This document shows, piece by piece, positions 1 through 56,874 of a stretch of 64,000 nucleotides of DNA. The DNA is taken from IMG/VR virus record IMGVR_UViG_3300024308_000018, positions 1 to 64,000 of that record. The stretch is one strand, 5' to 3'. Numbering within the stretch: the first letter of the stretch is position 1; each line of letters opens with the position of its first letter. Both the position numbers and the translations under genes were made by a program. The notes beneath the pieces are model-generated. The model was not told where the DNA came from. It did not search any database and saw only the letters and a program-made list of their open reading frames with translations.

Positions 1-120
1 AGCGTCGGGGTCTTCCTCTTCAGCGTCGGGGTCTTCCTCTTCAGCGTCGGGGTCTTCCTCTTCAGCGTCGGGGTCTTCCTCTTCAGCGTCGGGGTCTTCT
101 TCAGCGTCGGGGTCTTCTTC
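1..120 (-). repeat. Coding tandem repeat (VNTR): 4 x 21 bp plus 2 x 18 bp, encoding (E)EEDPDA
   Basis: agcgtcggggtcttcctcttc at 1, 22, 43 and 64; agcgtcggggtcttcttc at 85 and 103. Unit lengths are multiples of 3 and in frame with the CDS. Confidence 0.95.
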
Positions 121-20297: not shown

Positions 20298-20305
20298 GTT
20301 TACAG
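20298..20305 (-). promoter_or_regulatory. CTGTAAAC putative promoter element abutting the terminator
   Basis: Exact motif, intergenic, immediately 5' of the hairpin. Confidence 0.6.
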
Positions 20306-20312
20306 ATTTGCG

Positions 20313-38776: not shown

Positions 38777-38784
38777 CTTTACAG
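38777..38784 (-). promoter_or_regulatory. CTGTAAAG putative promoter element for the polymerase
   Basis: Between a terminator and ATG 38746. Confidence 0.55.
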
Positions 38785-38790
38785 TTTTCG

Positions 38791-38820
38791 GAAACAAGAA
38801 AGGGAGCACTAGGCTCCCTT
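38791..38820 (-). terminator. Rho-independent terminator
   Basis: aagggagc-ctagt-gctccctttcttgtttc. Confidence 0.8.
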
Positions 38821-38826
38821 GTAACG

Positions 38827-39297
38827 TTACTTGCGCTGTTGGTTTTGCTGGTGCTTCTGACCTTGCTGCTGAACGTTGTTCTGTTGAACGTTGTTCTGCT
38901 GCTGGGTCGGAGCAGGCGCAGGCGCTTCAGCCTTCACAGCAACTGGCTTGGGCTCAAGGCCCTCGTCGATTGCGGAAGACGTCAGCGGATTGAACGTCGC
39001 CATGTGCTTGTCGACTTCTGCCCGCAGCGCAGGGCTCAACAACACGTAGCTGATTTTCGGTACGGGGCCAGACGCCCAGCTCAGACCTTTCGGCAAGCGG
39101 GACGGGTAGGCCATCGGGTAGCCGCGAGTCGGCAACGCGGGATCGAAACTCTCTTCCATCTCCCACAGTCTCATTGCCGCTACAGCCTTCGGGCCCCAGC
39201 TCCCGTCGATTTCGCCGTCGTAGAATCCGAGCGCGGCCATGACTGCCTGCTGAGTGGCAAGCATTCGCTGCATCGGTGTTCCTTTGTTATCCATCAT
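38827..39297 (-). CDS. Peptidoglycan-binding domain protein with a Gln/Asn-rich tail
   Basis: Q..M.ALGFY.G.IDG.WGP....A...W matches PG_binding_1; QQNNV repeated twice at the C-terminus. Confidence 0.75.
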   Translation of the reverse strand: MMDNKGTPMQRMLATQQAVMAALGFYDGEIDGSWGPKAVAAMRLWEMEESFDPALPTRGYPMAYPSRLPKGLSWASGPVPKISYVLLSPALRAEVDKHMATFNPLTSSAIDEGLEPKPVAVKAEAPAPAPTQQQNNVQQNNVQQQGQKHQQNQQRK

Positions 39298-39330
39298 GTT
39301 CTCCAAGTAGAGAGGGCCGAAGCCCCCTCG

Positions 39331-42300
39331 TTACTTCTTGGGCTCGTCGGCGGTGGGGCGCACGCGGATTTCCGAGAGCGTCTTGACCACGGCCTTGAGG
39401 TTGGTAATGGTGTAACCAGCTTTCTGCAACTGGGACAGCACGCGCTTGGCTTCCGTGGGGTTAGCCACGAAGTTGATCGCCATGCTTTCGTGCAGTTTCC
39501 AAGTCGCGTACTTGGCGGTGGCACCGACCGATACCTTGCCGACGAGCTTGCGCGCGTGCGGGTTGGTCTTCAGGTCGATCATCACGCGCATACGGTCACG
39601 CATGAAGGACGGATATGCCTTCAGGATGTTGGGCTTCTGGTTGTCGATGTGGCGCGTGCGGAAGAACTCGATAACTTCGTTCTTCAGTTTGTACGCAACC
39701 GGGTAGAGGAACTTCGAACGGCCAGACTCGCTGAACACGTTCTGGATCTCTTCCAGTCGCTTGGCACTTGCCTTGTCGAACGGGCCTTCACCGAACACTG
39801 AATCCAAGTAATCAAGGTGAGCGTAGAAGTCCTTGATATACAGGGAGTCGGCATAGACGTACTCGCCGAACACTTTGAACCCGAAGCTCTTGACCAGTTC
39901 CTTGTAGTCACTGTCGCTGGTGTTCACGTAGATAGCCAGCAGGCCGTTATACACGGTCGGGTAAACTTCGATGCTCTTGTCGGGAGCGGCAGCGGCAGCT
40001 TTCGGGGTACGCGTGCGCGGAACCTTGTTGCCCGCAACGTCGACGTCCTTGCCAGTAGGCATAACGATCTTGCCTTCGGTGTCGGTGTCGCTGAGTACAG
40101 GCAGACCCGAGTTGATGGCCTTGCCCTCCTTGACGTTCTGCTTGCGAGTACCGCTGGCCTTCGCGCCTTCGGTTGCAACTTCGGCCCCTTCGCGGATCTG
40201 TTTGTCGATGTCGCGTTGGATTGCTTCTTCTTGCTTCCGACGTTTGTCCTCGGCCTTGGTGATTGCATCCTCGACTTCGGAGTCGCGCTTGGTCTTCGGC
40301 ACGGGCTTGACTCCGCCCTTGCTTCCCTTGGCGAACACGCTGCTACGCAGTACCGGATCCTTGATGGCGTTGACCGACACGTGGACACGACCTACCCCGA
40401 CAATGCGCTCACTGCCATCCTGATACTGCACTCGGACGGTGGTGAACGTCGGGTCAGCTTGACGCCGCTCGACGTCTGCGAACTTCTCGTCGTTGACCTT
40501 GCCAATACCGACGATGATACCGTTGCCCCATTCGGTGTGAACCGGAACCCCGTCAAACAACTTGCGGTGCTCTGCCTTGTTGTCGTTGTACGGAACCTTG
40601 GAGCCGCGCGACTTGTAGTAGTCACGGAACGATACCAGACCAAAGCCCCAGCGGTCGTGGATGCGTTGGTTCGGAACATACGGCACGTTGTCCAGCATGC
40701 GATAGCCAGCAGCAGGATCAACAGGCGCACCTTCAATGACGTGCATCGCGGACGCAGTTGACAGGCGCATCTCTGCGAACTCTGCGGCGTCGATAGCACT
40801 CAGGTTTGCCTTGGCGACGAAGTGTTGCAGGCTCTCGTCTTCCGGATCCATGTAGGTGTCGAAGTTGATCCACTTACCAGTCTTATCCAGAATGGTTTCG
40901 GCGTTGTAGGGCGGCTCTTGCATTGCTGCCCACTTCTTCACCTCGTCGTAGCGTGGGTTGCCCGCTTCGTCCCAGATGGTGGTCTTCACATCCTTGGCCG
41001 TCACACGCGCTACCTTCAGCACCTCCATCGTGTTGTTGGTCATCACCCAGTCGATGAAGATTACTTCACGCTTCATGTCACCCGGCTTTCCGTTCTCGTC
41101 GAAGATTGCGGAGTTGAAGTCCGGACGCATGATACGTGCATGCGACTGGCGAACGCGACCCGGTGACCACGGAGTGTCACAGCGGATAATGCGCGAACCG
41201 ATCTGCATGTTGTAGCCTTCAGTGATCCGCTGCTCGTTCGCCACCAGAATGCGGGCTTCAGAGTTGTTGCGGAACTGTTCGACCAGCTCTTTGGTGTCGG
41301 CACCTTTGCCCAGACGGATGGCGTAACGCGCCAGCTTCGGAGCGAGCTTCTTGAGCGACTTGATCACGGAATCGCCGGAGCGGGTGTATTCGCACAGCAC
41401 GATAACCTTGCCCGTGTCTTCCGGTTTCCAGTATTCCAGATCCTTGTCCGGAGTGACGTTGGATTCCGGCAGGCGGAAACGTTGCGGCGTACCCTGCTTC
41501 TGCTTACGTGCCAGATAGCGCTTGCCCTGATACACGCACAGGTCGAGTTCGAACGGACGGCAGCCCGCTTTCCACTCAAACATCTGGTGCATCTGTGCGA
41601 TCTCTTCGCCGTCATCATTGCGCTGCGGCTTGGCAGGCTCGATGAAGTTGGGCTGGACTTCGAAGTGCTTCTTGATCCGCTCGACAATCTTGTGCATCTT
41701 GACGGGGATGAAGTCTTTCACGCCCTGCTCTTTGAAGATCTCGACAGCTTCTGGGTCACCCATCGGGTCAGACAGGATCATTTCCATGCGCTGCCAGTAT
41801 TGGCGCAGCTTCACGGACGACGCAATCATCGAGCCGATAGAGTCAGCCGCTTCTTCCTCTTCTTCGAGCACTGCATCTTCATCAGCCAGCTCGTCGTCTT
41901 CGGATTCCGCGTCCTCGTCTTTCTTGACCGGGCCCTTGCGCTTGATCTCGGCCATCACCTCTTCGACCAACGCAGCGTACACAGCGTCATAGGCAATCTT
42001 GTGCAGGCCGGAGTGCGGCACGCTCGGATCGTCGATGTCGAAGTGCAGGAAGGTCTCGATAGGGTTGGGCAGCATGAACGCCCACTCTTTCCGCTTGTAC
42101 GATGCCATCGTTGCATAGTTGCTGAAGCGACCACGCATTGCGGCAACGCGCTTGTTGAACAGGTCAACAGCGTCCAGAGTTACAGCGCCATCACCGTTGG
42201 AGCGGGAGGCGTCTTCGATGTCCTGACCGTCGCCGAAGATACCCGGCGTGAACATTGCGGCTTGACCAACAACGTCAGACACCTTGTCGGGCACCAGAGT

Positions 42301-45300
42301 ACCGGTAGCCAGACGCTTGAACTTGACAGTGGATTGCAGGAACATCTGCTTGATAGCAGCGTGCACGCCGGAGCCAGAGTTCTTGACGCGGTGCGATTCG
42401 TCGAGGATCACGTAGTTGAACTTGTAGCGACGCAGGAATTCAGTCTGCGCCATGATAGTCACGCGCTCGCCACCGATGTCGGCATCGAAGCGGCCATGGT
42501 GGTTGGCGATGAACGTATCGGCGAACACGAAAATGGTGTTGACCGGAGCGTTGGACAGCAACTCCTGAATGCGCTCAAGGCCGTGCTCTTTCACGGTCTC
42601 GTTGGTGATCGGAACCACGTTCCAGTCGTGAGTGACCAGCAGCAAGTCTTCGCACCAGTTGGCGACCAGACCCTTCGGCGCGATTACCGCAGGTTTAATC
42701 GGCTCGTCCATGATCGACGCACACCACAGAATGTCGTGCAGGCCGAGGATGGTCTTACCGCCACCCGGATGGATGTCGAGCGTCGCGTAGGGCGGCGGCA
42801 CTTTCTTCGACAGCTGAGTCTGCGCCTTGAACTGGTGCGGCATCAGCGTGAAGTCGTGCGTACCTGCAATCTTCAGCGACTCTTCGCTCACGCTATCGTC
42901 AGGCTGGTTGGCCTCAACGTGGGCTTCGACGGCCTCGAAGTAACGGCGGGTGTCGGGAATCGCATGACCGAACATGAACGCGGTCGGCAGCACTGCACGC
43001 ATCAGGAAGCCGGACGGCATCAGGTTGGTTTCGTACAGGGCGCTGAACACTTTCTTCCGGTCGGCGTCGAACACAGCACGCGACATCGCAACCAGCAACG
43101 CACCGCCCAGATAACCACGCAGGTTACCCATGGTATGCAGGCCGGACTTCGACGGGCTGTCGATGAAGCGCCAGTCGTTCACGATCTCAGTGCTTTGACC
43201 CTGACGTTCCCAGAAGCCACGCAGGCGGCCACCGCGATACGAATCACGGGCGTCTTCGATTGCCAGCAGGACGCGGTACATTGCGATCTCGCCATCGTTC
43301 GCCAGACGGCCTTGCGCGGAGTACATGCCAGCGTCGATATAGTTGGCGGGCTCGGCTTCGGGATCGTGCTCCTGAGTGTACGCCATCTGGATCGCTTTCG
43401 CTTGGTTGTTGATTTCCTCGAAGGAGGGAACCAGACCCTTCTGCTGCATCCAGTCGTAGGTGCGGACGATCATGCACGCGGCATAACGCAGCATGTGCGG
43501 GCTACGGGCAGACTTCAGATCGTTCCAGTTGTTATTGTTGTAGCCAGCGTGCGGCACAGCAAACTCGTACTTGGTGCCGATACTAGCGGACATCGCGCTG
43601 ACCACGCGGTCGGTCACAGCACCTACCAGCATCAAGCGCTCGTTGGTTGCGTTGTAGCGCAGGAACTGGCCGAGTACGCGGGAGCCAGTGCGGATGTTCG
43701 GCGCTTCGCCTTCGGCTGCAAAGTTGAAGCCCAAGCTATCACCGATTTCCAGATCGGCAGCGGGTACTGCGCCGCTCTCCTGAATGGAGTCGAAGTTCAG
43801 GAAGTCCGCAGAGGTCTGGATAACCAAACCGGAAGTCGGATCCGTACCAACGACAACGTTGGAGAAGCGGTTGGCCTTGGCGCTGAAGTCGTTGTGCAGC
43901 GACGCGATGTTGACAGTGGTCTCACCGTTGACGCGCTCCAAATCGAGTTCCAGCACCTTGCGGTACTCGGTGCTCAAGTGGCCGACGGGGATGCCGTGCT
44001 CGTACAGAGTGCTCATGCCGTCGGCAAGTGCGGATTCTGCTTTCGCTACGACTTCGAGGTCGATGTCTTGGGTACGCGGGTACACGACCAGCGCGCCGTT
44101 GCTGCTGACTGCTACGCCCTTGTCATCGCCGATGGAGTCGGAGATGGGGAAGCCCAGCTTTTTGCGCATGTCGTTCAGGCGCTTGATCTCGGTGCTCGAA
44201 GTCAGGCAGCGCGGAACGTTGCTGCGGCTACCAGTGCGAGAACCGGACAGGCGGAAGAAGCCTTGGCACCAGCGGTTGAACCAACGAGCAAGCAGCAGCT
44301 CGGCCGCAGAGTGATCGTCGTTCTGGATGATGTAGTCGACCACAGGGTTCGGCAGGTGCAGGGTGTAACCCACGTGCACTACGAAACCGCAGTATGGCAA
44401 CATCGCATCGTGCATGGAAGCCATGCTACCAGCGTTGGTGCTACCGCTCAAGAGCGCGGCGGCGCGGGCGGTGTGTGCTTCAGCCAGTACACGACGCACG
44501 GTGAACTTGAACATCGGGCCGAGGTTAACGCGCACGGGATCAGGCACGAAGCGCGACGGGAAGAACACGGTGTTACCGATGGCTTCCTTGACGCCGGGGA
44601 TTTTCTGCAACGCAGCATTCAGCACGCTGAAGTTGGTGTCGAGATCGAAGTGCACAGTCTTCGACTTCAGGTTGGCCTTGGAGGGCACGTCGCCGAAGAA
44701 GAACTTGTGGAACGCCAGCGCTGCCTTGTGCACCGCTTGCCCGAACTCGGACTGCATGCCGCCGAAGTAGAAGTCACGGAACTCCTTGCTGGCTGATGTG
44801 TCGTCGGGCTTGCCAGACTTCTCGAACTCGGGCGAGCTGCCGTTGTACTGGAAGTAGGGGTCAATACCGGAGCCAACTTCGGAAACCAGCGAGTCGTTGC
44901 GGTAGGTCTGAAACGCGTTCCAGTAACCTTCGTTGGTGCCCGCAATCTTCACAACTTGCAATTCGTAGCCGTCGTTCCCGCGCTTGATTACCAAGTCGCT
45001 GGTGTTCGACATTGCCGCAGTGATCATGCCGCGAGTGGCGGACGTAATCATGGGCGTGCCGCTCTGCATCTTGGCGAGTACGGAGCCGCAGCTGGATTCG
45101 AACACTTGGGAAATCAGGGCAGCCGCACGACCGTTAGTGCCACGCATCTTTTCGAAGATCAGGGTGTTGCTGATCTCGACACTATTACGCATCAGCGCAG
45201 ATAAGAAGGACTGATACAGCTTGATGCGAACGTTCAAGGTGATCAGAGACTCAGCGAACGGGCCGTATTGGTCGGGACGCGGAGTGTTAGCCACGTCGCG

Positions 45301-45480
45301 CGTTGCCTTGGTCAGGCGATCAGGCGGAAACAGCGCATTGGAGAATACGGTTTCGTACTTCGGGTCGAGCGGGCGCGCCGTCAGCTCTGCCCCAATCTGA
45401 GCGCGCAGCTGGCTGGCTACGCCACCCGTTTCCTTGGGCGCTGCCGACTCAGATTGGAAGACGTTGAAGGGATATTGCAT
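39331..45480 (-). CDS. Giant SNF2-like (SF2) helicase/ATPase, 2049 aa
   Basis: Motifs L.PHQ, PGGGKT, P...V.NW, ILDESH..KN, LATGT, EGYNMQ and W.P....Q...RI.R. Preceded by an ~870-aa N-terminal extension beginning MQYPFNVFQSESA. Confidence 0.9.
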   Translation of the reverse strand: MQYPFNVFQSESAAPKETGGVASQLRAQIGAELTARPLDPKYETVFSNALFPPDRLTKATRDVANTPRPDQYGPFAESLITLNVRIKLYQSFLSALMRNSVEISNTLIFEKMRGTNGRAAALISQVFESSCGSVLAKMQSGTPMITSATRGMITAAMSNTSDLVIKRGNDGYELQVVKIAGTNEGYWNAFQTYRNDSLVSEVGSGIDPYFQYNGSSPEFEKSGKPDDTSASKEFRDFYFGGMQSEFGQAVHKAALAFHKFFFGDVPSKANLKSKTVHFDLDTNFSVLNAALQKIPGVKEAIGNTVFFPSRFVPDPVRVNLGPMFKFTVRRVLAEAHTARAAALLSGSTNAGSMASMHDAMLPYCGFVVHVGYTLHLPNPVVDYIIQNDDHSAAELLLARWFNRWCQGFFRLSGSRTGSRSNVPRCLTSSTEIKRLNDMRKKLGFPISDSIGDDKGVAVSSNGALVVYPRTQDIDLEVVAKAESALADGMSTLYEHGIPVGHLSTEYRKVLELDLERVNGETTVNIASLHNDFSAKANRFSNVVVGTDPTSGLVIQTSADFLNFDSIQESGAVPAADLEIGDSLGFNFAAEGEAPNIRTGSRVLGQFLRYNATNERLMLVGAVTDRVVSAMSASIGTKYEFAVPHAGYNNNNWNDLKSARSPHMLRYAACMIVRTYDWMQQKGLVPSFEEINNQAKAIQMAYTQEHDPEAEPANYIDAGMYSAQGRLANDGEIAMYRVLLAIEDARDSYRGGRLRGFWERQGQSTEIVNDWRFIDSPSKSGLHTMGNLRGYLGGALLVAMSRAVFDADRKKVFSALYETNLMPSGFLMRAVLPTAFMFGHAIPDTRRYFEAVEAHVEANQPDDSVSEESLKIAGTHDFTLMPHQFKAQTQLSKKVPPPYATLDIHPGGGKTILGLHDILWCASIMDEPIKPAVIAPKGLVANWCEDLLLVTHDWNVVPITNETVKEHGLERIQELLSNAPVNTIFVFADTFIANHHGRFDADIGGERVTIMAQTEFLRRYKFNYVILDESHRVKNSGSGVHAAIKQMFLQSTVKFKRLATGTLVPDKVSDVVGQAAMFTPGIFGDGQDIEDASRSNGDGAVTLDAVDLFNKRVAAMRGRFSNYATMASYKRKEWAFMLPNPIETFLHFDIDDPSVPHSGLHKIAYDAVYAALVEEVMAEIKRKGPVKKDEDAESEDDELADEDAVLEEEEEAADSIGSMIASSVKLRQYWQRMEMILSDPMGDPEAVEIFKEQGVKDFIPVKMHKIVERIKKHFEVQPNFIEPAKPQRNDDGEEIAQMHQMFEWKAGCRPFELDLCVYQGKRYLARKQKQGTPQRFRLPESNVTPDKDLEYWKPEDTGKVIVLCEYTRSGDSVIKSLKKLAPKLARYAIRLGKGADTKELVEQFRNNSEARILVANEQRITEGYNMQIGSRIIRCDTPWSPGRVRQSHARIMRPDFNSAIFDENGKPGDMKREVIFIDWVMTNNTMEVLKVARVTAKDVKTTIWDEAGNPRYDEVKKWAAMQEPPYNAETILDKTGKWINFDTYMDPEDESLQHFVAKANLSAIDAAEFAEMRLSTASAMHVIEGAPVDPAAGYRMLDNVPYVPNQRIHDRWGFGLVSFRDYYKSRGSKVPYNDNKAEHRKLFDGVPVHTEWGNGIIVGIGKVNDEKFADVERRQADPTFTTVRVQYQDGSERIVGVGRVHVSVNAIKDPVLRSSVFAKGSKGGVKPVPKTKRDSEVEDAITKAEDKRRKQEEAIQRDIDKQIREGAEVATEGAKASGTRKQNVKEGKAINSGLPVLSDTDTEGKIVMPTGKDVDVAGNKVPRTRTPKAAAAAPDKSIEVYPTVYNGLLAIYVNTSDSDYKELVKSFGFKVFGEYVYADSLYIKDFYAHLDYLDSVFGEGPFDKASAKRLEEIQNVFSESGRSKFLYPVAYKLKNEVIEFFRTRHIDNQKPNILKAYPSFMRDRMRVMIDLKTNPHARKLVGKVSVGATAKYATWKLHESMAINFVANPTEAKRVLSQLQKAGYTITNLKAVVKTLSEIRVRPTADEPKK

Positions 45481-46018: not shown

Positions 46019-46801
46019 CTATTTTTTCGAAAGCCGCTGGGCGGCCATGCGGAAGAAATCTGAAATCTTACGGTGGTCAATATAAACTACCGTTTTCGGA
46101 TAGATGCGCGTGCGGAACACAAGGACGTTGCCTTCAGCGCGTGCGACCGAGATGTCAGGCACGACCTCTACCCAGCGACTTGGCATTTGCGTAAGCTCGT
46201 CAACACTGGGCCACTTGGCATTACGCAGCGCCGGAATGTCGGTGGGCGACAGCAGCTTGCTTGGCACCGAGACTTTCGACAGCCAATGCTGAGAACGCAG
46301 TTTAAGTGCAGCAGCCATGTCAGCAGGCTTCGGCCCTTTGCGTCGCAGCACCAGCGAGTAATAGACGTCGACGTACTCGGGAACGTGCGCACTGATCGCC
46401 TTGTCGTAGTCGTAGTCCGGCCACAGGTTAACAGCCACCTTGGTGAAGTCGTTGAATATGCCACGCTGGCGTATGTAGGTCTCAAGGGATCTGCGCACCA
46501 GATCATCCAGCTCACGCACCGCTTTGTCCGCTGACATCTTGGCAGCAGAGAACGCGACGTTGCTGATGAACGGGCGCATCCGCTTGCTCTCAAGCGAGGC
46601 GATGAATGCCATAACAACTTCGAGCATCGCGGAGTCTGGATCGGTGTGGCGATTGTAGAGTTCGTAGCAGGTGGGCGATGCCACGAAGGTAGCCCACGCT
46701 TGCAAATGCTTCGGGTGAAGCGTAGTTGGAAAGTTCACCACGCTGCAATCGTTGTTGGCGACGCCAAGATTGCGTAGCAGCGTGCGGTTAGCAATTGACA
46801 T
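46019..46801 (-). CDS. Hypothetical protein
   Basis: 260 aa, TGATG-coupled to the HNH gene. Confidence 0.7.
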   Translation of the reverse strand: MSIANRTLLRNLGVANNDCSVVNFPTTLHPKHLQAWATFVASPTCYELYNRHTDPDSAMLEVVMAFIASLESKRMRPFISNVAFSAAKMSADKAVRELDDLVRRSLETYIRQRGIFNDFTKVAVNLWPDYDYDKAISAHVPEYVDVYYSLVLRRKGPKPADMAAALKLRSQHWLSKVSVPSKLLSPTDIPALRNAKWPSVDELTQMPSRWVEVVPDISVARAEGNVLVFRTRIYPKTVVYIDHRKISDFFRMAAQRLSKK

Positions 46802-47181
46802 CAGCGCCTCCGACGTTTGATGCCGCGCAGCAGTCTCGCCCCATTACGGTTCGAAGTCCCTATCTCATTGTTCATGTGACAGTCGATGCAGCGCAGTCGT
46901 AGGTTGTTGGGAGTGTAGGGGCCGCCGTCGGCATGTGCGATGATGTGAGCCACAGTGATTGTGGTCTGGTCTTCGCCTTTACCGCAGCGGGTGCAGCAAC
47001 GATTGTCGCGCGCCCACACGTAGGCATCGACCGCAGCCTTGACGCTTGCGGGAATCGCACGCACCAGAGTTCCGGCACGGGTACGATCCAATCCGCTGGT
47101 TGCGCCGCGCAGCCGCTGACTAACCTTGCGCGGGTGGCCGCCGAATGGGGCAGCGCGTGCCGCAATTCCACCTTTTGCCAT
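46801..47181 (-). CDS. HNH endonuclease
   Basis: RD..CC..CG...HI.....GG.....NL...C..CH. Confidence 0.9.
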   Translation of the reverse strand: MAKGGIAARAAPFGGHPRKVSQRLRGATSGLDRTRAGTLVRAIPASVKAAVDAYVWARDNRCCTRCGKGEDQTTITVAHIIAHADGGPYTPNNLRLRCIDCHMNNEIGTSNRNGARLLRGIKRRRR

Positions 47182-47958
47182 TTAGCCTCCAAGTACAGTC
47201 TGCGATTTGTCGAGCGAGTTTTCGTAAGAGCGCTGCATGCTGGTAGCAGCACTTGAAAACAGCTGATCCACTTTTGGCTTTAACGCGGCAGCCTGCTGGG
47301 GGTCAAGGTGGGAAGCGTGCAATCGGACTACGGCCTGATAGAGGTCGACCGTATCCTGCGAGATAGATTGCATCATTGGCGCAAGCACCTCGTCGTTCAA
47401 CAGCGAGCCCATGGCGCCAACGTCACGCAGCGCCCGCATGTCGGCAATCACTTCACGAATCTGGTTGTACGTCTGCATGAGCGGGTACACTTCGCGCCCG
47501 TTCTTGTTCCGTGTGATGTTGTCTTCCAGAATGTTCGCAATGTCCACCAGCTTGTCAAACATGTGGCGATACTGGGCAAGCTGCTCAGCGTCTTCACTGT
47601 TGTTGACCGGAATGCGTTCAATGACGGCTTCCGCTTCAGCCTTCAGCCTCTCCAATTCATCGCGGCGCTCGCTTGCCGAAGACGACGCGGTAATCTTGGC
47701 GATGGCCTTTTTGGTTGTAACCTTCTTCTTTACAGTTTCAGGTTCAACGTTTGCGGACTTGCGACGTTTGGGTTTGCGCTTAGGCATCGCCTCGTCGTCA
47801 GCTGGACGCTTCCGCTTGCGGTTCGGGGCGAACTCGTCGGCAACGCTCAGCTTCTTTTTCTTTTTGACACGCAGTGGCTTGGCGTCTTCCGCCTCGGGCT
47901 TACGCTTTTTTACCACGCGTTTCTTTTTGGCAAGTGCACCAAGTTCCACTTCGATCAT
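47182..47958 (-). CDS. Hypothetical protein with a K/R-rich N-terminus and helical C-domain
   Basis: 258 aa; adjacent to the HNH gene. Confidence 0.7.
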   Translation of the reverse strand: MIEVELGALAKKKRVVKKRKPEAEDAKPLRVKKKKKLSVADEFAPNRKRKRPADDEAMPKRKPKRRKSANVEPETVKKKVTTKKAIAKITASSSASERRDELERLKAEAEAVIERIPVNNSEDAEQLAQYRHMFDKLVDIANILEDNITRNKNGREVYPLMQTYNQIREVIADMRALRDVGAMGSLLNDEVLAPMMQSISQDTVDLYQAVVRLHASHLDPQQAAALKPKVDQLFSSAATSMQRSYENSLDKSQTVLGG

Positions 47959-48818: not shown

Positions 48819-50000
48819 TTAACGTCTAAGTCCGTAATGGGCACGCATCCACATACGTTGTTGTCCGTGGATTGACGATGCACCATAGCGAGTTGTTGGT
48901 GATACAGTGACACCCAGAACACCCATCTTCTGCGCGCCGTCTACACGTTTGCCGCCAATGGAGCCGTCGCCCTCGAACGCGCCAGCACGCGCCAACAATT
49001 TCTTGTAGGGCATGACTATCGTGTTGAGCTGGCCTTCAAGGCGGCCGAGCGTTGCTTCAATGGCAGGCGTCCGATCCATGTTGAGGCTGACAGTCTGACC
49101 GCTAAAGTCAAACGCCAAGCTACCTTCAGCAAGGAACTGTGCACTCAGCGCGTGAATGCTTGCGCAGATTACCCACGAATCGAGAAGCGGGCCCTGCATG
49201 TTGGTTCCGGTGAAGTTGGTTGCTCGCGACGGCAGAGAGTTGAACATCGCGAGGCCCCGATACAGGTAGTTCATCAAATCAGATTCGACGTACTCCAACT
49301 CGGGAATCACGTTCTCCATCCGTGCACGGTCGATGAAGTTTTGCAGCATGCCCATCGCCACACCAATCTGCGGGTTCACTGTCCACAGAATGAATTGTGT
49401 GTTGCGCACCATGTTACCAGTGATCGGATTCACGGGGTCAATGCGTGCGCTCAGCGAGTATGGTGCCACGATAGGCGGCCAGCCACTGAGAGGCAGACGG
49501 TATACCGTCCGGTCAGACAGCTGGGCAACCAGCTCAACGTCGGAGTCGAGATTCGTGTAGCGTGCAATCACATCGTTGTTGAGTGACAGCGCCAGCTTCA
49601 CCTTGTCACCGTCGCGAATCACCCACGGCAGAACGACGTCGTAATAAACGGTCTCGCCGGGTTCATCGAAGTAGACACAGATGTCGGTGATACGCTTGCG
49701 GCTCTCTGGTTCGATCACAACCTGCTGCGACATGCGTTCGCGGCCTTGCTCGGTCTCGAATACCCAGACAACTGTCACCTCGATTTCATCTTCCAGCCCC
49801 ATTACCGGGTACGCAACGTCACACGTCCAAACACCCGGCGTCAAATCAGGAGCTGCGGATCCTTCGAAGAGGATTTCCCCGTCGCTGGTGATAGCGCGCA
49901 CCAGCGGGCCGGATCCGAAATCGGTAGGCTGCAACGGCAAGCCGTCATCGTCTACGAACTTTTGAGTGACTGGCAGGATCCCGCCTTCAGTTACCCGCAT
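48819..50000 (-). CDS. Putative neck/head-tail adaptor protein
   Basis: Beta-sandwich-like N-part and helical C-part (L..YL.RGL..FN..P...FDFSGQTVSLN.D), reminiscent of myovirus neck proteins. Start revised to 50000. Confidence 0.4.
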   Translation of the reverse strand: MRVTEGGILPVTQKFVDDDGLPLQPTDFGSGPLVRAITSDGEILFEGSAAPDLTPGVWTCDVAYPVMGLEDEIEVTVVWVFETEQGRERMSQQVVIEPESRKRITDICVYFDEPGETVYYDVVLPWVIRDGDKVKLALSLNNDVIARYTNLDSDVELVAQLSDRTVYRLPLSGWPPIVAPYSLSARIDPVNPITGNMVRNTQFILWTVNPQIGVAMGMLQNFIDRARMENVIPELEYVESDLMNYLYRGLAMFNSLPSRATNFTGTNMQGPLLDSWVICASIHALSAQFLAEGSLAFDFSGQTVSLNMDRTPAIEATLGRLEGQLNTIVMPYKKLLARAGAFEGDGSIGGKRVDGAQKMGVLGVTVSPTTRYGASSIHGQQRMWMRAHYGLRR

Positions 50001-51096
50001 TGTACGCCGCCTCAATCAGCTGAATGAGGGTTTTCATTGCGGGAAGCGTCACCAGACCTTGAGTCAGGCATTCGGCCGCCTCAAGGTTACGCATCTGCGC
50101 GATGGTATCCAGCAACCCTTGTTGCAGTGACGGGGTATTTGCACACCCAGCAATCACACGCATCATGAACATCGTGACGTAGCGTTCGGACTCCGCGTAA
50201 CGCTTCTCGTCGATGGGCACACCTTGCAGTGCACGCATGCGGGTGATCAGCGCAACGAGTTCGGGGGCCGGACGAATTGGAGCCACCAGATTCTTGATTG
50301 CAACGGACATCAGGGCCATCGCGGGCGCAAGGAACTGAGTCACCGACGTTTCGATCAGAGCACGTGCGCGGTCGCCGACACCGAAGCGGTAGACGTCATC
50401 ATCCAGATAGAGGCTCCAATACAGCGGGAACATGGCGGGCAATTCGCGCTGCCAGATCAGGTAGCTGTACTCGGCCCACACTTTCGGAACCATGATCCAC
50501 TCGGACACCGGAACGTTATCAACGATCTGACTCAGGGTAGTCGCAGCGTAAGCGCGGTTGGCGTAGATGTGGAAGTATTGGGGATCGCATTCGGTCTCCA
50601 ACACCATGCCGTTACGCAGCAGGTTCTTGGTTGCGGCACCCACTACATTGTAGAGAACGCGCAGCACAGGTTCAAGCAGCGTGGTGGCTTGGGTCTTTGC
50701 CAGCTCGGTGCGCGGCACAAACACGGTGGCAAACTTGGTGCGGCTATCGCCCCAGATTACCAGACCGCGACCGCGACTGTCTTCCGGCGTAGGCCAGACA
50801 AACTTGCTCTTGCCTTTGATGGGCTTGAGTGCGAAGGTGAACGCGATACCCGCATCTTGCGTCACAATCTGAGGCGCATCTTCAATGTAGCCGATACTGA
50901 TTTGGTTCGGCGCATAGAACATGTTGATCAGCGTGAAGTCGATTGCGAATGGTGCGAGCAGGGATCCGGCAGCACTGGATTTCAACGTGGAGAGCACAGA
51001 CCCGAGGATCGGCCCTACACGATCAACGCCGGAGATGTTGTCCTGAAAGAACGACATCCCCGCGCTGGGTGCAGTTTTGAATGTGGTTTTCCACAT
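49987..51096 (-). CDS. Hypothetical protein
   Basis: 369 aa, GGAG RBS. Confidence 0.7.
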   Translation of the reverse strand: MWKTTFKTAPSAGMSFFQDNISGVDRVGPILGSVLSTLKSSAAGSLLAPFAIDFTLINMFYAPNQISIGYIEDAPQIVTQDAGIAFTFALKPIKGKSKFVWPTPEDSRGRGLVIWGDSRTKFATVFVPRTELAKTQATTLLEPVLRVLYNVVGAATKNLLRNGMVLETECDPQYFHIYANRAYAATTLSQIVDNVPVSEWIMVPKVWAEYSYLIWQRELPAMFPLYWSLYLDDDVYRFGVGDRARALIETSVTQFLAPAMALMSVAIKNLVAPIRPAPELVALITRMRALQGVPIDEKRYAESERYVTMFMMRVIAGCANTPSLQQGLLDTIAQMRNLEAAECLTQGLVTLPAMKTLIQLIEAAYNAGN

Positions 51097-51107
51097 AGAG
51101 CACTCCC

Positions 51108-52409
51108 TTACTTCATGGCGGCAACGAGATTGCGACGTTGGCTTTCATCCATGCCCAGCAGGCTGGCGACTTCGTTGATCTTCTGAAGCGTCATCGAGCC
51201 AGCCTTGGAACCGCGCGTCGGCAGGATACTGAATTCCAGCCACTCACGACCTTGCTGCCCGCGAACAACCTTGTAGGTGATCGCGTTGTTCTTGCGTTGG
51301 CTGGTCATGCCGCCGCTATACATGCTGCTGACAATGGCAACGACTTCGTTGATTGCTGCGGCGCGTTCGCGGGGGCTCATGCCCTTGACCAGACGCACGA
51401 AGATCTTGTGGTTCGAGACGCGCACGCCGTCGATGATCTGCACGTCTTTGCCGTTGATGTTGTGGGTCTTGAGGCCGAGCGCAGTTGCTTTACGCATGTG
51501 GTCGGTGCTACGCCCAACAGGACGACGGTCGCCAAACGCCGGAGTACCGTCAATCGCGAGCAGGCGGTTAACGGACGCTTTCAGCTGCGGCAGCGACTTG
51601 AACTCGGAACCGAACGGGAAGGTGCCCGGCGCTTTGCTGTCAACCAGACTGGTGATGAAGCGTGCGGTCTTGCCCGTCATGGTATTCAGGGAGCTGGTGA
51701 TCACCATGATGTACGTGGGGTACGTGTACCCGTCATCGCTGGTGAAATCCGCAACCGTGATATACGACTGGTAGTTAACGAGGGAGCCGCTGCTGCCTGC
51801 AATGTAGTGCACCAGAGAGATCTTGGTGTAGCGATCTTTCTCGATGGTGGACTTCAGGTAGCGACCGACAGAAGCCGCGAGGCTCTGGTGTTCTGCGGGA
51901 ACTTCGTCTTTCGCTGCTTGCGACAACTTGAACCAGCGGTCGCGAATGATAGTAGCTTCCTTGATGGTTGCGGCTACCGATGCAGCGGTGTCCTTGGCCG
52001 TCTTCATCTTGCTGAAGTTGGGGGACATGAGCAGTTGATACGCTGCGTTCAACTCAGTGATTGTCTGGTTGAGGATCGCAAGGTTGCGGGCAGCGCGGGC
52101 ACGGGATTGTGCGGTGTCGAGTTTGAGACCTTCGAGATCGGTAACGTCGTCGAGCACCGGGTGCGCAGCACGCGCAGGACGAACAGGCTGCTTGGAGACA
52201 AGCGTGCCTGACTCAATCTCCGCCGATGCAGAATTCAACTTGGCACGCACCTTCAGAGAAGAAGGGCGCTGCTTCAAGTCCAGCACTGCGTCGAGTTCGG
52301 TTTGCATGGAACTGACGGAAGTGATTAGCGGACTGACGTGCGCCCTCAACTCAGTAACGGTGCGACTGGCAGTTATCTTCTGCAACGTTGCACTTGGTTG
52401 ATTGGACAT
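51108..52409 (-). CDS. Probable virion structural protein
   Basis: Start revised to 52409 (GGGAG RBS), directly behind a TAATTT motif; contains internal LNSASA. Confidence 0.55.
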   Translation of the reverse strand: MSNQPSATLQKITASRTVTELRAHVSPLITSVSSMQTELDAVLDLKQRPSSLKVRAKLNSASAEIESGTLVSKQPVRPARAAHPVLDDVTDLEGLKLDTAQSRARAARNLAILNQTITELNAAYQLLMSPNFSKMKTAKDTAASVAATIKEATIIRDRWFKLSQAAKDEVPAEHQSLAASVGRYLKSTIEKDRYTKISLVHYIAGSSGSLVNYQSYITVADFTSDDGYTYPTYIMVITSSLNTMTGKTARFITSLVDSKAPGTFPFGSEFKSLPQLKASVNRLLAIDGTPAFGDRRPVGRSTDHMRKATALGLKTHNINGKDVQIIDGVRVSNHKIFVRLVKGMSPRERAAAINEVVAIVSSMYSGGMTSQRKNNAITYKVVRGQQGREWLEFSILPTRGSKAGSMTLQKINEVASLLGMDESQRRNLVAAMK

Positions 52410-52436
52410 TCTGGGAACTCCCTTGGCTGTGACAAC

Positions 52437-52487
52437 GTAAATTATTGAGCAAGTCACAGTAGCCTTGCATACACGTTCTGTTTACAG
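52437..52487 (-). promoter_or_regulatory. Tandem putative promoters: CTGTAAAC (52480-52487) and ATAATTTAC (52437-52445)
   Basis: Both recurring motifs occur in one intergenic region downstream of a terminator. Confidence 0.6.
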
Positions 52488-52522
52488 AATCCGCGAACGC
52501 ATTTCGGTGGATTTTGAATGTG

Positions 52523-54867: not shown

Positions 54868-54914
54868 AGTAGAAGAGGACGAACACCACTTGGCATCCGT
54901 CCTCTCGTTTACAG
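54868..54914 (-). promoter_or_regulatory. CTGTAAAC motif abutting a terminator-like hairpin
   Basis: CTGTAAAC (54907-54914) followed by gagaggacgga...ttcgtcctcttctacttt. Confidence 0.55.
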
Positions 54915-54915
54915 T

Positions 54916-56874
54916 TTAGCCGAGCACTGGTGTGAAGTGCGAAAGGAACCACTCACGTCCGCCAGTGATTGCCTTGTCGCCACACAGAACAACGTAGTTG
55001 TCCGTCTGCACCACAAAGTCGGAGATGCTGCCTTCACTGTTGTAGATAGTCAGACCGTTGCGGCCGTAGCACACGGTAGACTTCTGGCAACGTTGCGCGG
55101 CTGCAACGATGACGCCAGCGACAGCGGGGGAGCCATCGTAGATATAGGCGATTGCGGTTTCGCCTTCCTTGTCGATAACATGGAACGGGCCATTGTCTAC
55201 GGCTTCATCCTGCTCGACCGGATCGGTGTTGCCGTCGAAGGCCATGTCGTACTCTTTGCGCACCGAGTCTTCGCTCATGACGCGGAAGTGGCCGTTGCCG
55301 ACGTGCACGATGTAGTCACCAACGTTGATCGGAGTCAGCGGGAATTCGCCGTCCCACTTGAGTGCGATGGAGTCGGTGGCCGGAGTTTTGTCATACACGA
55401 TGCGGCAGATGTCGGTGCTGTTGTTCACCCACTCGACAACTTGGTCTGCGCTCTCCACGGTGCCATCGAAACGGGCCATGTCGTGGTAAGCGGCGCGGCG
55501 GCGAACGTTGAACACACCACGGAAGAGATGCGCGTTGCTCTGCGCTGCAATAAACTGGTCGAGACCTTCGAGAGGCAGCGAGTCCCGCACAGGCTTACGT
55601 ACCTGCTCGGCCACGTCACCTACTTGCGATGGAGAGTTGATCTGTACCAGACGACGGCCATTTTTCTTGTCGCCATTGATCAGGTCGATGCGCACGCCGG
55701 GAACAAAGGCGAGAGCTTCAGCAACCTCGTCACCTTGCTGCGTCGTAACCTGCACCACGCAACCGACGCCCGGAATTTCCATGGCCTTCGTGCTCTTCAT
55801 CCAGCCTTCGTCCTCGCTGCTGGCCTTACAGATCAACTTGAAGGTATCACCATCGCCGTAGATCTGAATGTCGCGAACGTTGTCGCGTGCACCGCTGACC
55901 GAGCTGTTGTGCAGGGTCTTGCCACCTTTCTTTTCTTTCTTTTCTTTCTTCACTTTCTTTGCCTTGTCCGCCATGATGTCTTCCTCGTTTACTTCGATGT
56001 AGGTTGCTTGAAAGTCCGACGCCGTTACAACTTCGATCTTGCTGTAGTCGGTGCCGAGGTCGTGGGCAACGATGTAATCGCCAACGTTGACCGGAGTTTG
56101 ATTACCCATTACGTTGAGCACCAGCCCCAGACTGTTGGACAGGAACTTGGACTGTGCGCGCTTGCTGTAAATCTGATCCAATATACGGAAGCGACAGCGG
56201 GCAGTCCCATCGTAGACGAGGGCCAAGCTGTTGGTCACCACCATACTCGCGCGCTCACGGATGTGCTTCATCTCGTAGCTCAGGAATTTCGGGAGCGCAC
56301 CTTCTTCGACCACTGAGAGTACGCCATCGGCATCGACACGCACTGTCCGCCCTTCAGCGATTGTGATACTACCATTGCTGTCGGTCAGTACCACGTAGCC
56401 ATCGTGTGTCAGCCGGAAAGCCTTACCGAACTCGCTGGCGTAGATGCGCAGGATCTCCAACGAAGGCAAGCCGCTGTACTTCATGAAGAACGAATAGTCT
56501 TCAGTGTTGCAGCGCTTGGCACACGGGTGATAGTCCAGCATGTTCTTGAGCTTCAATACAGTATGGCGCTTGTCAATCTCATAGAGCTTGAGGAACGTCT
56601 CGGTGTTGAAGTAGATGATGTGCGGCGAGTCATCAGGGGCGTGCGTTATCGCCACGTAGTTGTTGAATGGGATTTTCTGCATGTCGCCGTGAGGGGTCGT
56701 GATGAACTTGATCCCGTCGAGTTCCTTGAACCCAACGGGGAATCCATGACACGCCAGAAACTCCGTCACTTCCGAAATGCTTTCCGGTTGGTTGAGGAAT
56801 CTGAAGAAGACGCCGACGTCAGGGGCGGCACCGACTGCACCATTGCGCAGTTTCACTTCTACCTTGTGGTACAT
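54916..56874 (-). CDS. Multidomain protein: about 5 divergent GDY-type repeats plus an inserted conserved phage domain
   Basis: P(V/I)NVGDYIV occurs twice exactly and three weaker copies end in F...Y. Central KASS..EGWMKSTKAMEI.G.GC.VQVTTQQ domain. Confidence 0.65.
   Translation of the reverse strand: MYHKVEVKLRNGAVGAAPDVGVFFRFLNQPESISEVTEFLACHGFPVGFKELDGIKFITTPHGDMQKIPFNNYVAITHAPDDSPHIIYFNTETFLKLYEIDKRHTVLKLKNMLDYHPCAKRCNTEDYSFFMKYSGLPSLEILRIYASEFGKAFRLTHDGYVVLTDSNGSITIAEGRTVRVDADGVLSVVEEGALPKFLSYEMKHIRERASMVVTNSLALVYDGTARCRFRILDQIYSKRAQSKFLSNSLGLVLNVMGNQTPVNVGDYIVAHDLGTDYSKIEVVTASDFQATYIEVNEEDIMADKAKKVKKEKKEKKGGKTLHNSSVSGARDNVRDIQIYGDGDTFKLICKASSEDEGWMKSTKAMEIPGVGCVVQVTTQQGDEVAEALAFVPGVRIDLINGDKKNGRRLVQINSPSQVGDVAEQVRKPVRDSLPLEGLDQFIAAQSNAHLFRGVFNVRRRAAYHDMARFDGTVESADQVVEWVNNSTDICRIVYDKTPATDSIALKWDGEFPLTPINVGDYIVHVGNGHFRVMSEDSVRKEYDMAFDGNTDPVEQDEAVDNGPFHVIDKEGETAIAYIYDGSPAVAGVIVAAAQRCQKSTVCYGRNGLTIYNSEGSISDFVVQTDNYVVLCGDKAITGGREWFLSHFTPVLG

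What the first reader, a model, noticed from the sequence alone, without database searches (positions are those of the whole stretch)
39331..45480. 2049-aa SNF2-like ATPase carrying the putative capsid tag
Seen: complete SNF2-type motifs, an ~870-aa uncharacterised N-region, an acidic insertion, a KOW/SH3-like VHTEWGNG segment and N-terminal FQSESA. It lies at the end of a run of probable head genes. Established: P1 DarB is a virion-packaged protein with a helicase-like domain that acts in anti-restriction. Inference: a packaged DNA translocase that could aid ejection, strip basic proteins from incoming DNA, or counter restriction.
Basis: partly seen in the sequence, partly recalled or inferred. 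Interest (0 to 1): 0.6.

Follow-up and report, generated by a model that had tools for sequence, protein, structure and literature searches.

The report
Giant virion-linked SNF2 ATPase of a jumbo phage
The 2049-residue gene is real and encodes an intact SNF2-type DNA motor protein found only in one clade of giant phages; its counterpart in phage PaBG was detected in purified virus particles, so it may ride in with the DNA, though what it does there is untested.

Summary
The ORF at 39331-45480 (minus strand, 2049 aa) is real. All SNF2/SF2 ATPase motifs are invariant across 25 relatives of 26-94% identity. It matches PHROG 21391 ("DNA helicase") over its full length and is the syntenic counterpart of Pseudomonas phage PaBG gp202. 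In a published gel and mass-spectrometry analysis, gp202 (221 kDa) is band 1 of CsCl-purified PaBG virions.

The 870-aa N-region folds confidently (pLDDT 87). It has no known structural relative and occurs only inside giant proteins of this family (106 clusters among 1.84 billion proteins). The acidic stretch and an SH3/Tudor/KOW-like barrel at VHTEWGNG are present.

The "capsid tag" is not supported. The only other FQSESA in the window is out of frame, and PaBG virion proteins share no such tag. The family does keep a disordered N-terminal hydrophobic-S-x-S peptide.

The neighbours are a head-tail connector operon upstream and the replication module downstream, not a run of head genes.

P1 DarB is an analogue: it is SNF2-related and virion-borne, but there is no specific homology and this protein has no methylase. 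Function remains inferred. This is a new member of a known but unstudied family.

The parts
39331..45480 (-). Complete CDS of the 2049-aa giant SNF2-family ATPase (stop codon at 39331-39333)
   Evidence: PHROG 21391 full-length match, E=0; 47 relatives
45421..45480 (-). Residues 1-20: disordered N-terminal peptide. It holds FQSESA (res 8-13, 45442-45459), this protein's version of the family-conserved hydrophobic-S-x-S-[A/K] motif
   Evidence: pLDDT <50 for residues 1-20; S10 nearly invariant
42871..45420 (-). Residues 21-870: family-specific N-region, confidently folded, mixed alpha/beta, no known fold match
   Evidence: AF2 pLDDT 86.9, pTM 0.79; no PDB match; BFVD matches are three viral proteins, the one named being the Achromobacter phage Motura helicase; found only in giant proteins, 106 clusters
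42196..42858 (-). Residues 875-1095: SNF2 ATPase lobe 1 with PHQ, Walker A GGGKT (42748-42768), motif Ia, DESH (42391-42402) and TGT
   Evidence: Pfam PF00176, 28.6 bits against a cut-off of 24.9; invariant columns; profile hits to SsoRad54, Rad54, INO80 and ISWI
41419..42195 (-). Residues 1096-1354: insertion between the lobes, at the usual SNF2 insertion site. It holds the acidic run 1188-1213 (41842-41919) and a small CBM5/12-like aromatic motif at 1301-1354 (41419-41580)
   Evidence: CBM_5_12 only E=0.47 in relative P0014
41071..41418 (-). Residues 1355-1470: SNF2 ATPase lobe 2 with motifs IV, V, DTPWSPG and motif VI QSHARIMRPD (41119-41148)
   Evidence: Pfam PF00271; SsoRad54 1z63 E=4.9e-18 with the family profile
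40561..41070 (-). Residues 1471-1640: conserved, mostly helical segment after the ATPase
40366..40560 (-). Residues 1641-1705: five-stranded SH3/Tudor/KOW-like beta-barrel containing VHTEWGNG (40519-40542)
   Evidence: AF2 strands; weak Tudor, SAWADEE, eS4 and Spt5 matches at Z about 5; Pfam PcrA_UvrD_tudor only E=0.16
39976..40365 (-). Residues 1706-1835: long charged single helix followed by a disordered, Lys/Pro-rich linker
   Evidence: coiled-coil-type matches only
39334..39975 (-). Residues 1836-2049: conserved C-terminal alpha/beta domain, no known relative, not found as a separate protein
38827..39306 (-). 159-aa downstream gene, homolog of PaBG gp203 'putative lysozyme', with a peptidoglycan-binding-like N-terminus; last gene of the transcription unit
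   Evidence: blastp 37% identity, E=1e-14; weak SleB match
38800..38820 (-). Terminator-like hairpin (8 pairs plus a T-rich tail) that closes the connector-to-helicase unit just before Pol I
38778..38789 (-). Promoter-like GAAAACTGTAAA upstream of Pol I. The same 12 bases stand at the matching place in Lu11, where the annotated 'putative middle/late promoter' starts at CTGTAAA
52481..52492 (-). Promoter-like GGATTCTGTAAA, 24 nt upstream of the 449-aa gene that heads the connector-to-helicase gene string
48819..50015 (-). Head-tail connector protein gene in the same gene string (phrog_17327; PaBG gp195)
47182..47958 (-). 258-aa protein (PaBG gp198 homolog) with a very basic Lys/Arg-rich N-terminal ~100 aa, pI 9.7; a CTGTAAA motif lies inside it at 47729-47740

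Best explanation
The gene encodes an active SNF2-family double-stranded-DNA translocase, a motor that walks along the duplex without unwinding it. This core is embedded in a giant protein found only in this phage clade. The layout is a disordered N-terminal peptide, an 850-aa domain block of unknown fold, a split ATPase with an acidic insertion, an SH3/Tudor-like barrel, a long helix and a C-terminal alpha/beta domain.

The gene lies in the same gene string as the head-tail connector gene. By analogy with its PaBG ortholog gp202, the protein is built into the virion. The most likely mechanism is that it enters the cell with, or stays bound to, the phage genome. There it would use ATP to move along the incoming duplex and clear bound proteins. 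Candidates are co-packaged basic proteins, host nucleoid proteins or restriction and defence complexes. The result would be DNA that is accessible and protected early in infection.

Shown: the gene is real; the ATPase motifs are intact and conserved; orthology and synteny with PaBG gp202 hold; gp202 is present in purified PaBG virions (published). Inferred: virion presence in this phage; a location inside the head; ejection into the host; a remodeller-type action on entering DNA.
For: The ORF is real and the motifs are conserved. The family profile hits only SNF2 enzymes in the PDB, with SsoRad54 best at E=4.9e-18. The match to PHROG 21391 is full length. Orthology and collinearity with PaBG gp190-gp211 hold. 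PaBG gp202 is band 1 of purified virions (PMC7412058 Table 1), and the masses agree. The helicase lies in one gene string with the connector gene, closed by a hairpin before Pol I. The N-region and C-domain occur only in this giant architecture, which argues for a specialised role rather than a generic helicase. Inteins have invaded the ATPase core in several lineages; by background knowledge, inteins tend to sit in conserved sites of important enzymes. P1 DarB is a precedent for a virion-borne SNF2-related giant protein that acts on entering DNA (PMC5512222). Basic proteins are encoded in the same operon, and the ATPase carries an acidic patch.
Against: Virion presence rests on one gel and MALDI study of one relative that is only 29% identical. 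That study gives no copy number and no location in the particle. The gene abuts the replication module. Its operon begins with the same CTGTAAA promoter-like motif that precedes Pol I, the clamp gene and the RecA and sigma-factor gene strings. That motif was not found upstream of the capsid, sheath or portal genes. There is no methylase and no specific similarity to DarB. No shared packaging tag was found. No experiment addresses ejection or function.
Confidence: 0.5

Rival explanations
1. It is an ordinary intracellular replication, recombination or repair remodeller. It would work like Rad54 or RapA, or as a UvsW back-up that rescues forks or clears RNA polymerase, and would be made for use in the infected cell. 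Its detection in PaBG virions would then be incidental carry-over on packaged DNA.
For: Databases annotate it as a DNA helicase. It lies immediately upstream of Pol I, the clamp gene and UvsW. Its operon shares the CTGTAAA promoter-like motif with replication genes. A comparative study proposes recombination roles for other jumbo-phage groups' own SNF2 helicases (PMC7824862). Lobe 2 resembles RapA and DpdE/DrmD-type SNF2 enzymes weakly.
Against: A 221-kDa band visible by Coomassie in CsCl-purified virions is hard to explain as carry-over. The phage already has UvsW, DnaB and RecA homologs. About 1400 residues of family-specific domains and the co-orientation with the connector gene are not expected for a fork remodeller.
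Confidence: 0.25
2. It is a genome-internalisation motor. Anchored at the tail exit or inner membrane after ejection, the SNF2 translocase would reel the roughly 230-kb genome into the cell, much as RNA polymerases pull in T7 or N4 DNA.
For: The ortholog is in virions. It is a dsDNA translocase class with intact motifs. The genome is very long, and the phage has no RNA polymerase of its own, only a sigma-factor homolog (PMC7824862). The extra domains could serve as anchors.
Against: There is no membrane-binding or tail-binding feature and no transmembrane segment. There is no precedent for an SNF2 entry motor. Nothing shows that the protein is ejected first.
Confidence: 0.1
3. It acts during assembly in the producer cell, for example by organising or condensing DNA for packaging or at head-tail joining, and it stays bound at the neck or on the DNA as a passive passenger.
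For: It shares a gene string with the head-tail connector homolog. The ortholog is in virions.
Against: The phage has its own large terminase. No similarity to packaging or portal-associated proteins was found.
Confidence: 0.1

Closest known systems
Pseudomonas phage PaBG gp202 (AGS82077; 'putative ATP-dependent DNA helicase', listed as 'RuvB helicase-like protein' in the virion table) and PHROG 21391
   Same: The domain order is the same along the whole length. Identity is 29% over residues 823-2043, with weaker N-region similarity. The neighbours match: connector, HNH, helicase, lysozyme-like gene, Pol I.
   Different: Sequence divergence is high, and the N-terminal 820 aa barely align by BLAST. 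The window protein is 80 aa longer. Virion presence is shown only for PaBG.
Alexandravirus, Salmondvirus and Yoloswagvirus giant helicases (e.g. Dickeya phage AD1 gp175, JA11_164) and Lu11_0099
   Same: About 35% identity over residues 273-2040, or 27% for Lu11. The gene order is the same, and the N-terminus keeps the hydrophobic-S-x-S motif.
   Different: No functional or proteomic data were found for them. Some relatives, such as Yersinia phage fHe-Yen9-02, carry inteins.
Phage P1 DarB (virion-borne anti-restriction protein, 2255 aa)
   Same: It is a giant protein with an SNF2-related ATPase in the middle, at about residues 830-1520 against 875-1470 here. [quoted passage not shown]
   Different: DarB has an N6-adenine methyltransferase, which is absent here. 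There is no significant pairwise or profile similarity outside the motif II region. The N- and C-terminal regions are unrelated.
Sulfolobus SsoRad54 and eukaryotic Rad54, INO80 and ISWI; bacterial RapA (SNF2 ATPase cores)
   Same: The ATPase motifs and the two-lobe core are shared. These are the best PDB hits with the family profile.
   Different: Only the core aligns. The 259-aa insertion, the N-region and the C-terminal domains have no counterpart, and no RapA N-terminal domains are present.

Membership tests
SNF2/SWI2 family of SF2 ATPases | Pfam SNF2-rel_dom (PF00176) and Helicase_C (PF00271) above their gathering scores | tested here: met
   28.6 bits against 24.9, and 23.8 against 23.5, the latter marginal. 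Relatives score higher.
SNF2/SWI2 family of SF2 ATPases | Conserved motifs: Q/PHQ, I (GxGKT), Ia, II (DExH), III (TGT), IV, V, the WxP block and VI (QxxxRxxR) | tested here: met
   All are invariant or nearly so in 25 sequences of 26-94% identity.
SNF2/SWI2 family of SF2 ATPases | The nearest solved structures are SNF2 enzymes rather than other SF2 clades | tested here: met
   All 47 PDB hits at E<=0.001 appear to be SNF2-type enzymes. SsoRad54 is best at 4.9e-18, followed by Rad54, INO80, ISWI, CHD1L, DDM1 and RapA.
SNF2/SWI2 family of SF2 ATPases | dsDNA-stimulated ATPase and duplex translocation without strand separation | not testable with these tools
   This needs ATPase and triplex-displacement assays.
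PHROG 21391 / PaBG gp202 group of giant jumbo-phage helicases | Full-length collinear match, including the N-region and the C-terminal domain | tested here: met
   E=0; residues 229-2041 against profile positions 221-2016 of 2021. The N-region profile finds only giant proteins.
PHROG 21391 / PaBG gp202 group of giant jumbo-phage helicases | Conserved gene neighbourhood: connector, HNH, helicase, lysozyme-like gene, Pol I | tested here: met
   blastp synteny with PaBG. The order is the same in AD1, Lu11 and JA11.
PHROG 21391 / PaBG gp202 group of giant jumbo-phage helicases | Presence in purified virions | not testable with these tools
   Reported only for PaBG (PMC7412058). The window is an uncultivated IMG/VR genome.
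P1 DarB-like methylase-helicase dyad (polyvalent proteins) | An N6-adenine DNA methyltransferase domain fused to the ATPase | tested here: not met
   DarB itself hits N6_Mtase and Eco57I. The window protein and its relatives hit neither, and it has no [DNS]PP[YFWH] motif.
P1 DarB-like methylase-helicase dyad (polyvalent proteins) | Specific sequence relationship to DarB beyond generic SF2 motifs | tested here: not met
   Best BLASTP E=0.071. hhalign probability is 7.6%, covering only the motif II region.
P1 DarB-like methylase-helicase dyad (polyvalent proteins) | Packaged in the head, injected, and protects DNA in cis from restriction | not testable with these tools
   The only evidence is virion presence of an ortholog.
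PcrA/UvrD/Mfd-type Tudor domain that binds RNA polymerase | Pfam PcrA_UvrD_tudor above its cut-off, or profile similarity to solved examples | tested here: not met
   E=0.16, 12.3 bits against a cut-off of 23.9. The family profile finds only chance antibody matches in the PDB. The fold is SH3/Tudor-like at Z about 5 only.
Capsid-targeting or prohead-protease tag (as in T4 internal proteins) | The same N-terminal peptide shared by several virion proteins of the phage, or a conserved protease site | tested here: inconclusive
   The only other exact FQSESA in the window is out of frame. A looser M-x(1-6)-hydrophobic-S-x-S-[AGK] start occurs in about 13 ORFs of the genome. It was defined after the fact and may reflect A/T-rich first codons. 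Among the PaBG genes examined, which include all 14 virion proteins, only the baseplate wedge gp240 starts with such a motif. A Glu before the second Ser is not conserved in the family.

The most novel reading that the evidence does not exclude
A whole clade of jumbo phages carries in its particles a chromatin-remodeller-type motor. It would be delivered with the genome and would either reel the 230-kb DNA into the cell or strip co-packaged basic proteins and host defence complexes from it. That would be a DNA-entry or 'phage chromatin remodelling' mechanism with no described precedent. It would rely on an 850-aa domain block of new fold and on an acidic patch acting as a sink for basic proteins.
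Probability: 0.15. Interest if true: 0.8.

Novelty: new member of a known kind. Interest (0 to 1): 0.5.

Why it matters
If the protein is truly virion-borne and delivered, this widespread clade of jumbo phages would use an SNF2 motor at the most vulnerable step of infection. The clade includes Baikalvirus, Alexandravirus, Salmondvirus, Yoloswagvirus, Lu11 and many metagenomic relatives. That would add a new enzyme class to the short list of proteins injected with phage DNA. It would also offer a tractable model: PaBG, AD1 and the Erwinia phages are cultivable. With them one could study how very long genomes enter cells and escape defence.

The 850-aa N-region is a confidently predicted fold with no known relative, which makes it a good target for structure determination. 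The gene is also an intein hotspot, which may be useful to people who mine inteins.

Tried and rejected
- Nucleotide search of the phage collection: no match, so only protein-level relatives exist.
- DarB homology: rejected.
- An RNA-polymerase-binding Tudor domain of the PcrA/UvrD type: only E=0.16, and the profile search found nothing, so it is not supported.
- Fold searches of the N-region: Foldseek against the PDB, VIA-align wide search and the ESM Atlas found no meaningful match. BFVD returned three viral proteins, the one named being the Motura helicase.
- Fold searches of the C-region: only weak Tudor/KOW similarity for the barrel.
- Protein Atlas feature search of the N-region and the C-domain: no usable hit.
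- Word search for the C-terminal domain as a separate protein: one fragment only.
- PDB profile searches with the N-region and C-domain profiles: nothing credible.
- CBM5/12 assignment of residues 1301-1354: only E=0.47 in one relative, kept as a remark.
- The 'split helicase' of Dickeya phages JA11 and JA33: I first took it as a sign that the gene is dispensable. It is a different gene (JA11_155+156); the giant gene JA11_164 is intact.
- N-terminal tag among PaBG virion proteins: not shared; among the PaBG genes examined only the baseplate wedge gp240 starts with a comparable motif.
- Prohead-protease site by comparison with capsid protein N-termini: uninformative.
- A packaged helicase in phiKZ as a precedent: the two papers read contradict each other, so it was not used.
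- The Lu11 genome paper is not held in the library. No virion proteomics was found for the Alexandravirus or Salmondvirus phages.
- RNA libraries: short contigs from three metatranscriptomes lie on the gene. Contigs cannot prove transcription or timing.


Full report
**The object.** The window is the first 64 kb of a 229,746-bp IMG/VR virus record that CheckV rates complete. GC content is 56.6%, and almost all genes here lie on the minus strand. The ORF at 39331-45480 (minus strand) is 2049 codons, 228.4 kDa, pI 6.5. Its third-position GC is 0.76, typical of real genes in this genome. The long antisense ORF that overlaps it has 0.60.

**Family and conservation.** Pfam finds SNF2-rel_dom at 906-1087 and Helicase_C at 1353-1452, both above their cut-offs. 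PHROG 21391 ('DNA helicase') matches from residue 229 to 2041 with E=0. tblastn finds 95 phage records, none above 60% identity. The best are Erwinia and Dickeya jumbo phages (Alexandravirus, Salmondvirus, Yoloswagvirus) at about 35% over residues 273-2040, followed by Lu11. More distant jumbo phages (phiRSL1, BcepSauron, Motura and others) share only the ATPase core. The word-index search gave 47 relatives of 28-94% identity, nearly all about 1900-2100 aa. In an alignment of 25 of them the following are invariant: PHQ 881-883, GGGKT 906-910, DESH 1027-1030, TG 1059-1060 (T1061 nearly invariant), W1438/P1440/G1441, and Q1445/R1449/R1452. A profile of the core hits only SNF2 enzymes in the PDB: SsoRad54 at E=4.9e-18, then Rad54, INO80, ISWI and RapA. 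The protein is therefore an intact SNF2-family ATPase. Longer family members owe their length to inteins inserted in the ATPase core.

**Anatomy.** AlphaFold2 with the family alignment gives a confident model of residues 1-870 (pLDDT 86.9, pTM 0.79), in which only residues 1-20 are disordered. The fold has no match in the PDB by Foldseek or by the wide VIA-align search (best Z 5.2), and none in the ESM Atlas. In BFVD it matches three viral proteins at E<=0.001; the one that carries a name is the Achromobacter phage Motura helicase. An exhaustive HMMER profile search of 1.84 billion representative proteins found 106 clusters. Nearly all are proteins of 1800-2700 aa with the region at their N-terminus; the short hits look like fragments. 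The N-region is thus a hallmark of this giant architecture.

Between the two ATPase lobes lies a 259-aa insertion, at the usual SNF2 insertion site. It holds the acidic run 1188-1213, and residues 1151-1250 carry a net charge of -17. It also holds a small aromatic motif at 1301-1354 that resembles CBM5/12, but only at E=0.47 in one relative.

The model of residues 1455-2049 is weaker (pLDDT 68.9). It shows a helical segment, then a five-stranded barrel at about 1641-1705 that contains VHTEWGNG. After that come a charged helix of about 55 residues, a disordered Lys/Pro-rich linker and a C-terminal alpha/beta domain. The barrel gives only weak matches to Tudor, SAWADEE, eS4 and Spt5-KOW structures (Foldseek E about 0.5, Z about 5). 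A tempting link to the RNA-polymerase-binding Tudor domain of PcrA/UvrD rests on E=0.16 and was not borne out by a profile search. The C-terminal domain has no relative in the PDB or the Atlas and does not occur as a separate protein.

**The key outside evidence.** The PaBG paper (PMC7412058) lists 14 proteins identified by MALDI-TOF from Coomassie-stained bands of CsCl-purified virions. Band 1 is gene product 202, 221,161.95 Da, 'RuvB helicase-like protein'. PaBG_00202 (KF147891, 148541-154450) translates to 1969 aa and 221,159 Da. It aligns with the window protein at 29% identity over residues 823-2043, plus a weaker N-region segment. The neighbourhoods are collinear. In order they hold SbcD (gp190), head-tail connector (gp195), gp197, gp198, HNH (gp199), the giant ATPase (gp202), a lysozyme-like gene (gp203), Pol I (gp205), clamp (gp207), gp209, UvsW (gp210) and an exonuclease (gp211). 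AD1, Lu11 and JA11 show the same order. That paper does not discuss it, and I found no proteomics for the closer Erwinia and Dickeya relatives.

**The 'capsid tag'.** FQSESA is at residues 8-13. The only other exact copy in the window, at about 19939, lies in an 81-codon frame that overlaps the real gene 19084-20250 out of frame. It is chance. Within the family, the first 10-20 residues keep a hydrophobic-S-x-S-[A/K] pattern (ISTSA, LSLSA, ESLSK; PaBG has LNSLSAA), and S10 is nearly invariant. The peptide is predicted to be disordered, so it is probably functional.

In the window's own genome about 13 ORFs start with M-x(1-6)-hydrophobic-S-x-S-[AGK], against about 3 expected from internal frequencies. 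Only one clear paralogous pair is among them. However, I defined the pattern after seeing it, and A/T-rich first codons would enrich Ser, Ile, Lys and Asn at N-termini anyway. Among the PaBG genes examined, which include all 14 virion proteins, only the baseplate wedge gp240 starts with such a motif. A Glu that could mark a T4-type prohead-protease site is present only in the closest relatives. I therefore treat the tag idea as unproven.

**Transcription context.** A good hairpin followed by a T-rich tail lies at 38820-38800 (minus strand), after the 159-aa lysozyme-like gene. Directly after it comes GAAAACTGTAAA. The same 12 bases stand at the matching place in Lu11, where the annotated 'putative middle/late promoter' upstream of Pol I starts at CTGTAAA. 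The motif A-[A/C/T]-[A/C/T]-CTGTAAA occurs 29 times in the genome, always in the direction of the genes and mostly 10-60 nt upstream of start codons. It precedes Pol I, the clamp gene, an exonuclease gene and the gene strings that hold the RecA and sigma-factor homologs. It also precedes the 449-aa gene that heads the connector-to-helicase string. It does not precede the capsid, sheath, tube, portal or terminase genes. The giant ATPase is thus separated from the replication genes by a terminator-like site, yet it may belong to the same temporal class. This is mild evidence for the rival 'intracellular enzyme' reading.

**Comparison with P1 DarB.** Pfam calls DarB's ATPase SNF2-related too (residues 849-911, E=1.3e-10). 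Helicase_C lies at 1455-1517 and an N6-adenine methylase near the N-terminus. The two proteins share enzyme class, size and rough layout. DarB is described as a head component that protects entering DNA in cis (PMC5512222). There is no significant pairwise similarity (best E=0.071) and hhalign gives a probability of 7.6%. The window protein has no methylase domain or motif. It works perhaps like DarB, but it is not a DarB family member.

**Mechanism.** I commit to a virion-associated SNF2 translocase that acts on the phage genome at or just after entry by clearing bound proteins, with confidence 0.5. The circumstantial points are these. SNF2 enzymes displace proteins from duplex DNA. The operon encodes very basic proteins: the 258-aa gp198 homolog has a Lys/Arg-rich N-terminus, and the 449-aa protein has pI 10. 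PaBG virions contain the strongly basic gp191. The ATPase itself carries a conserved acidic patch. The rivals are an intracellular replication or recombination remodeller (0.25), a genome-internalisation motor (0.1) and an assembly-phase role (0.1).

**Ecology and expression.** Near-identical DNA is held by runs from about ten studies (eight hold most of the gene, two a small share): subsurface, groundwater, wastewater, wetland, fish gut, bird, food and leaf litter. Short contigs from three metatranscriptomic libraries lie on the gene, which is compatible with transcription but does not prove it.

**Verdict.** The tag and the 'head gene run' are not. The object is a new, divergent member of a catalogued but functionally unstudied family. 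Interest is moderate (0.5), because a Coomassie-visible chromatin-remodeller-type motor in virions is unexplained and can be tested in cultivable relatives.

Noticed in passing
window 38778-38789, 52481-52492, 54908-54919, 47729-47740, 20299-20310, 1507-1518 (all minus strand); 29 copies in the whole genome: A promoter-like motif A-[A/C/T]-[A/C/T]-CTGTAAA always lies in the direction of the genes, mostly 10-60 nt upstream of start codons. The copy before Pol I reads GAAAACTGTAAA, the same 12 bases as at the matching place in Lu11, where the annotated 'middle/late promoter' starts at CTGTAAA. It precedes replication-type genes and the connector-to-helicase operon, but not the capsid, sheath or portal genes.
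   Followed up: partly
window 1-1473, 1525-5208, 7373-8188, 20313-22520, 22524-25169, 25179-26018, 26386-26904, 26914-27630 (minus strand); genome 193535-194026, 196636-197859, 208950-209615, 210188-210925: About 13 ORFs begin M-x(1-6)-hydrophobic-S-x-S-[A/G/K], for example MINISTSA, MKIQLSISA and MLLNLSLSA. About 3 would be expected. Only one clear paralogous pair is among them. This could be a shared N-terminal signal of virion proteins, or simply A/T-rich first codons.
   Followed up: partly
window 20313-22520 and 22524-25169 (minus strand): Two adjacent large genes (735 and 881 aa) are paralogs over their N-terminal ~245 residues (56% identity) and diverge afterwards. They look like a duplicated module with swapped C-terminal parts. 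Both match phrog_17056, of unknown function.
   Followed up: partly
window 47182-47958 (minus strand) and 51108-52457 (minus strand): The 258-aa homolog of PaBG gp198 has an extremely Lys/Arg-rich first ~100 residues (pI 9.7), and the 449-aa first gene of the operon has pI 10. They are candidate DNA-binding or internal proteins encoded in the same operon as the ATPase.
   Followed up: partly
window 46801-47181 (minus strand): An HNH endonuclease gene sits inside the connector-to-helicase gene string. PaBG, Lu11, AD1 and JA11 have one at the same relative position, so it is a conserved resident rather than a recent homing insertion.
   Followed up: partly
relatives P0029 (Yersinia phage fHe-Yen9-02), P0076, P0069, P0080: Several family members of 2450-2740 aa carry one or two inteins (Intein_splicing, LAGLIDADG_3) inserted in the SNF2 core. 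The gene is an intein hotspot.
   Followed up: partly
window 41419-41580 (residues 1301-1354): A conserved pattern W..G..P.E.D.AVY.G..YLARK ... YWK.E lies inside the SNF2 insertion. It resembles a CBM5/12-type small aromatic beta domain (Pfam E=0.47 in one relative). It is an unexpected module inside an ATPase.
   Followed up: partly
window 38827-39306 (minus strand): A 159-aa gene with a peptidoglycan-binding-like N-terminus, homolog of PaBG gp203 'lysozyme', always follows the giant ATPase and ends the transcription unit. It may be a virion-associated wall-binding protein.
   Followed up: no
window 19922-19939 (minus strand): The second FQSESA of the window lies in an 81-codon frame that overlaps the real gene 19084-20250 in another frame. 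It is a chance match.
   Followed up: yes
whole gene, window 39331-45480: Near-identical DNA is present in runs from about ten independent studies of very different habitats: subsurface, groundwater, wastewater, wetland, fish gut, bird, food and leaf litter. The host is therefore probably a ubiquitous aquatic bacterium. The host was not identified.
   Followed up: no
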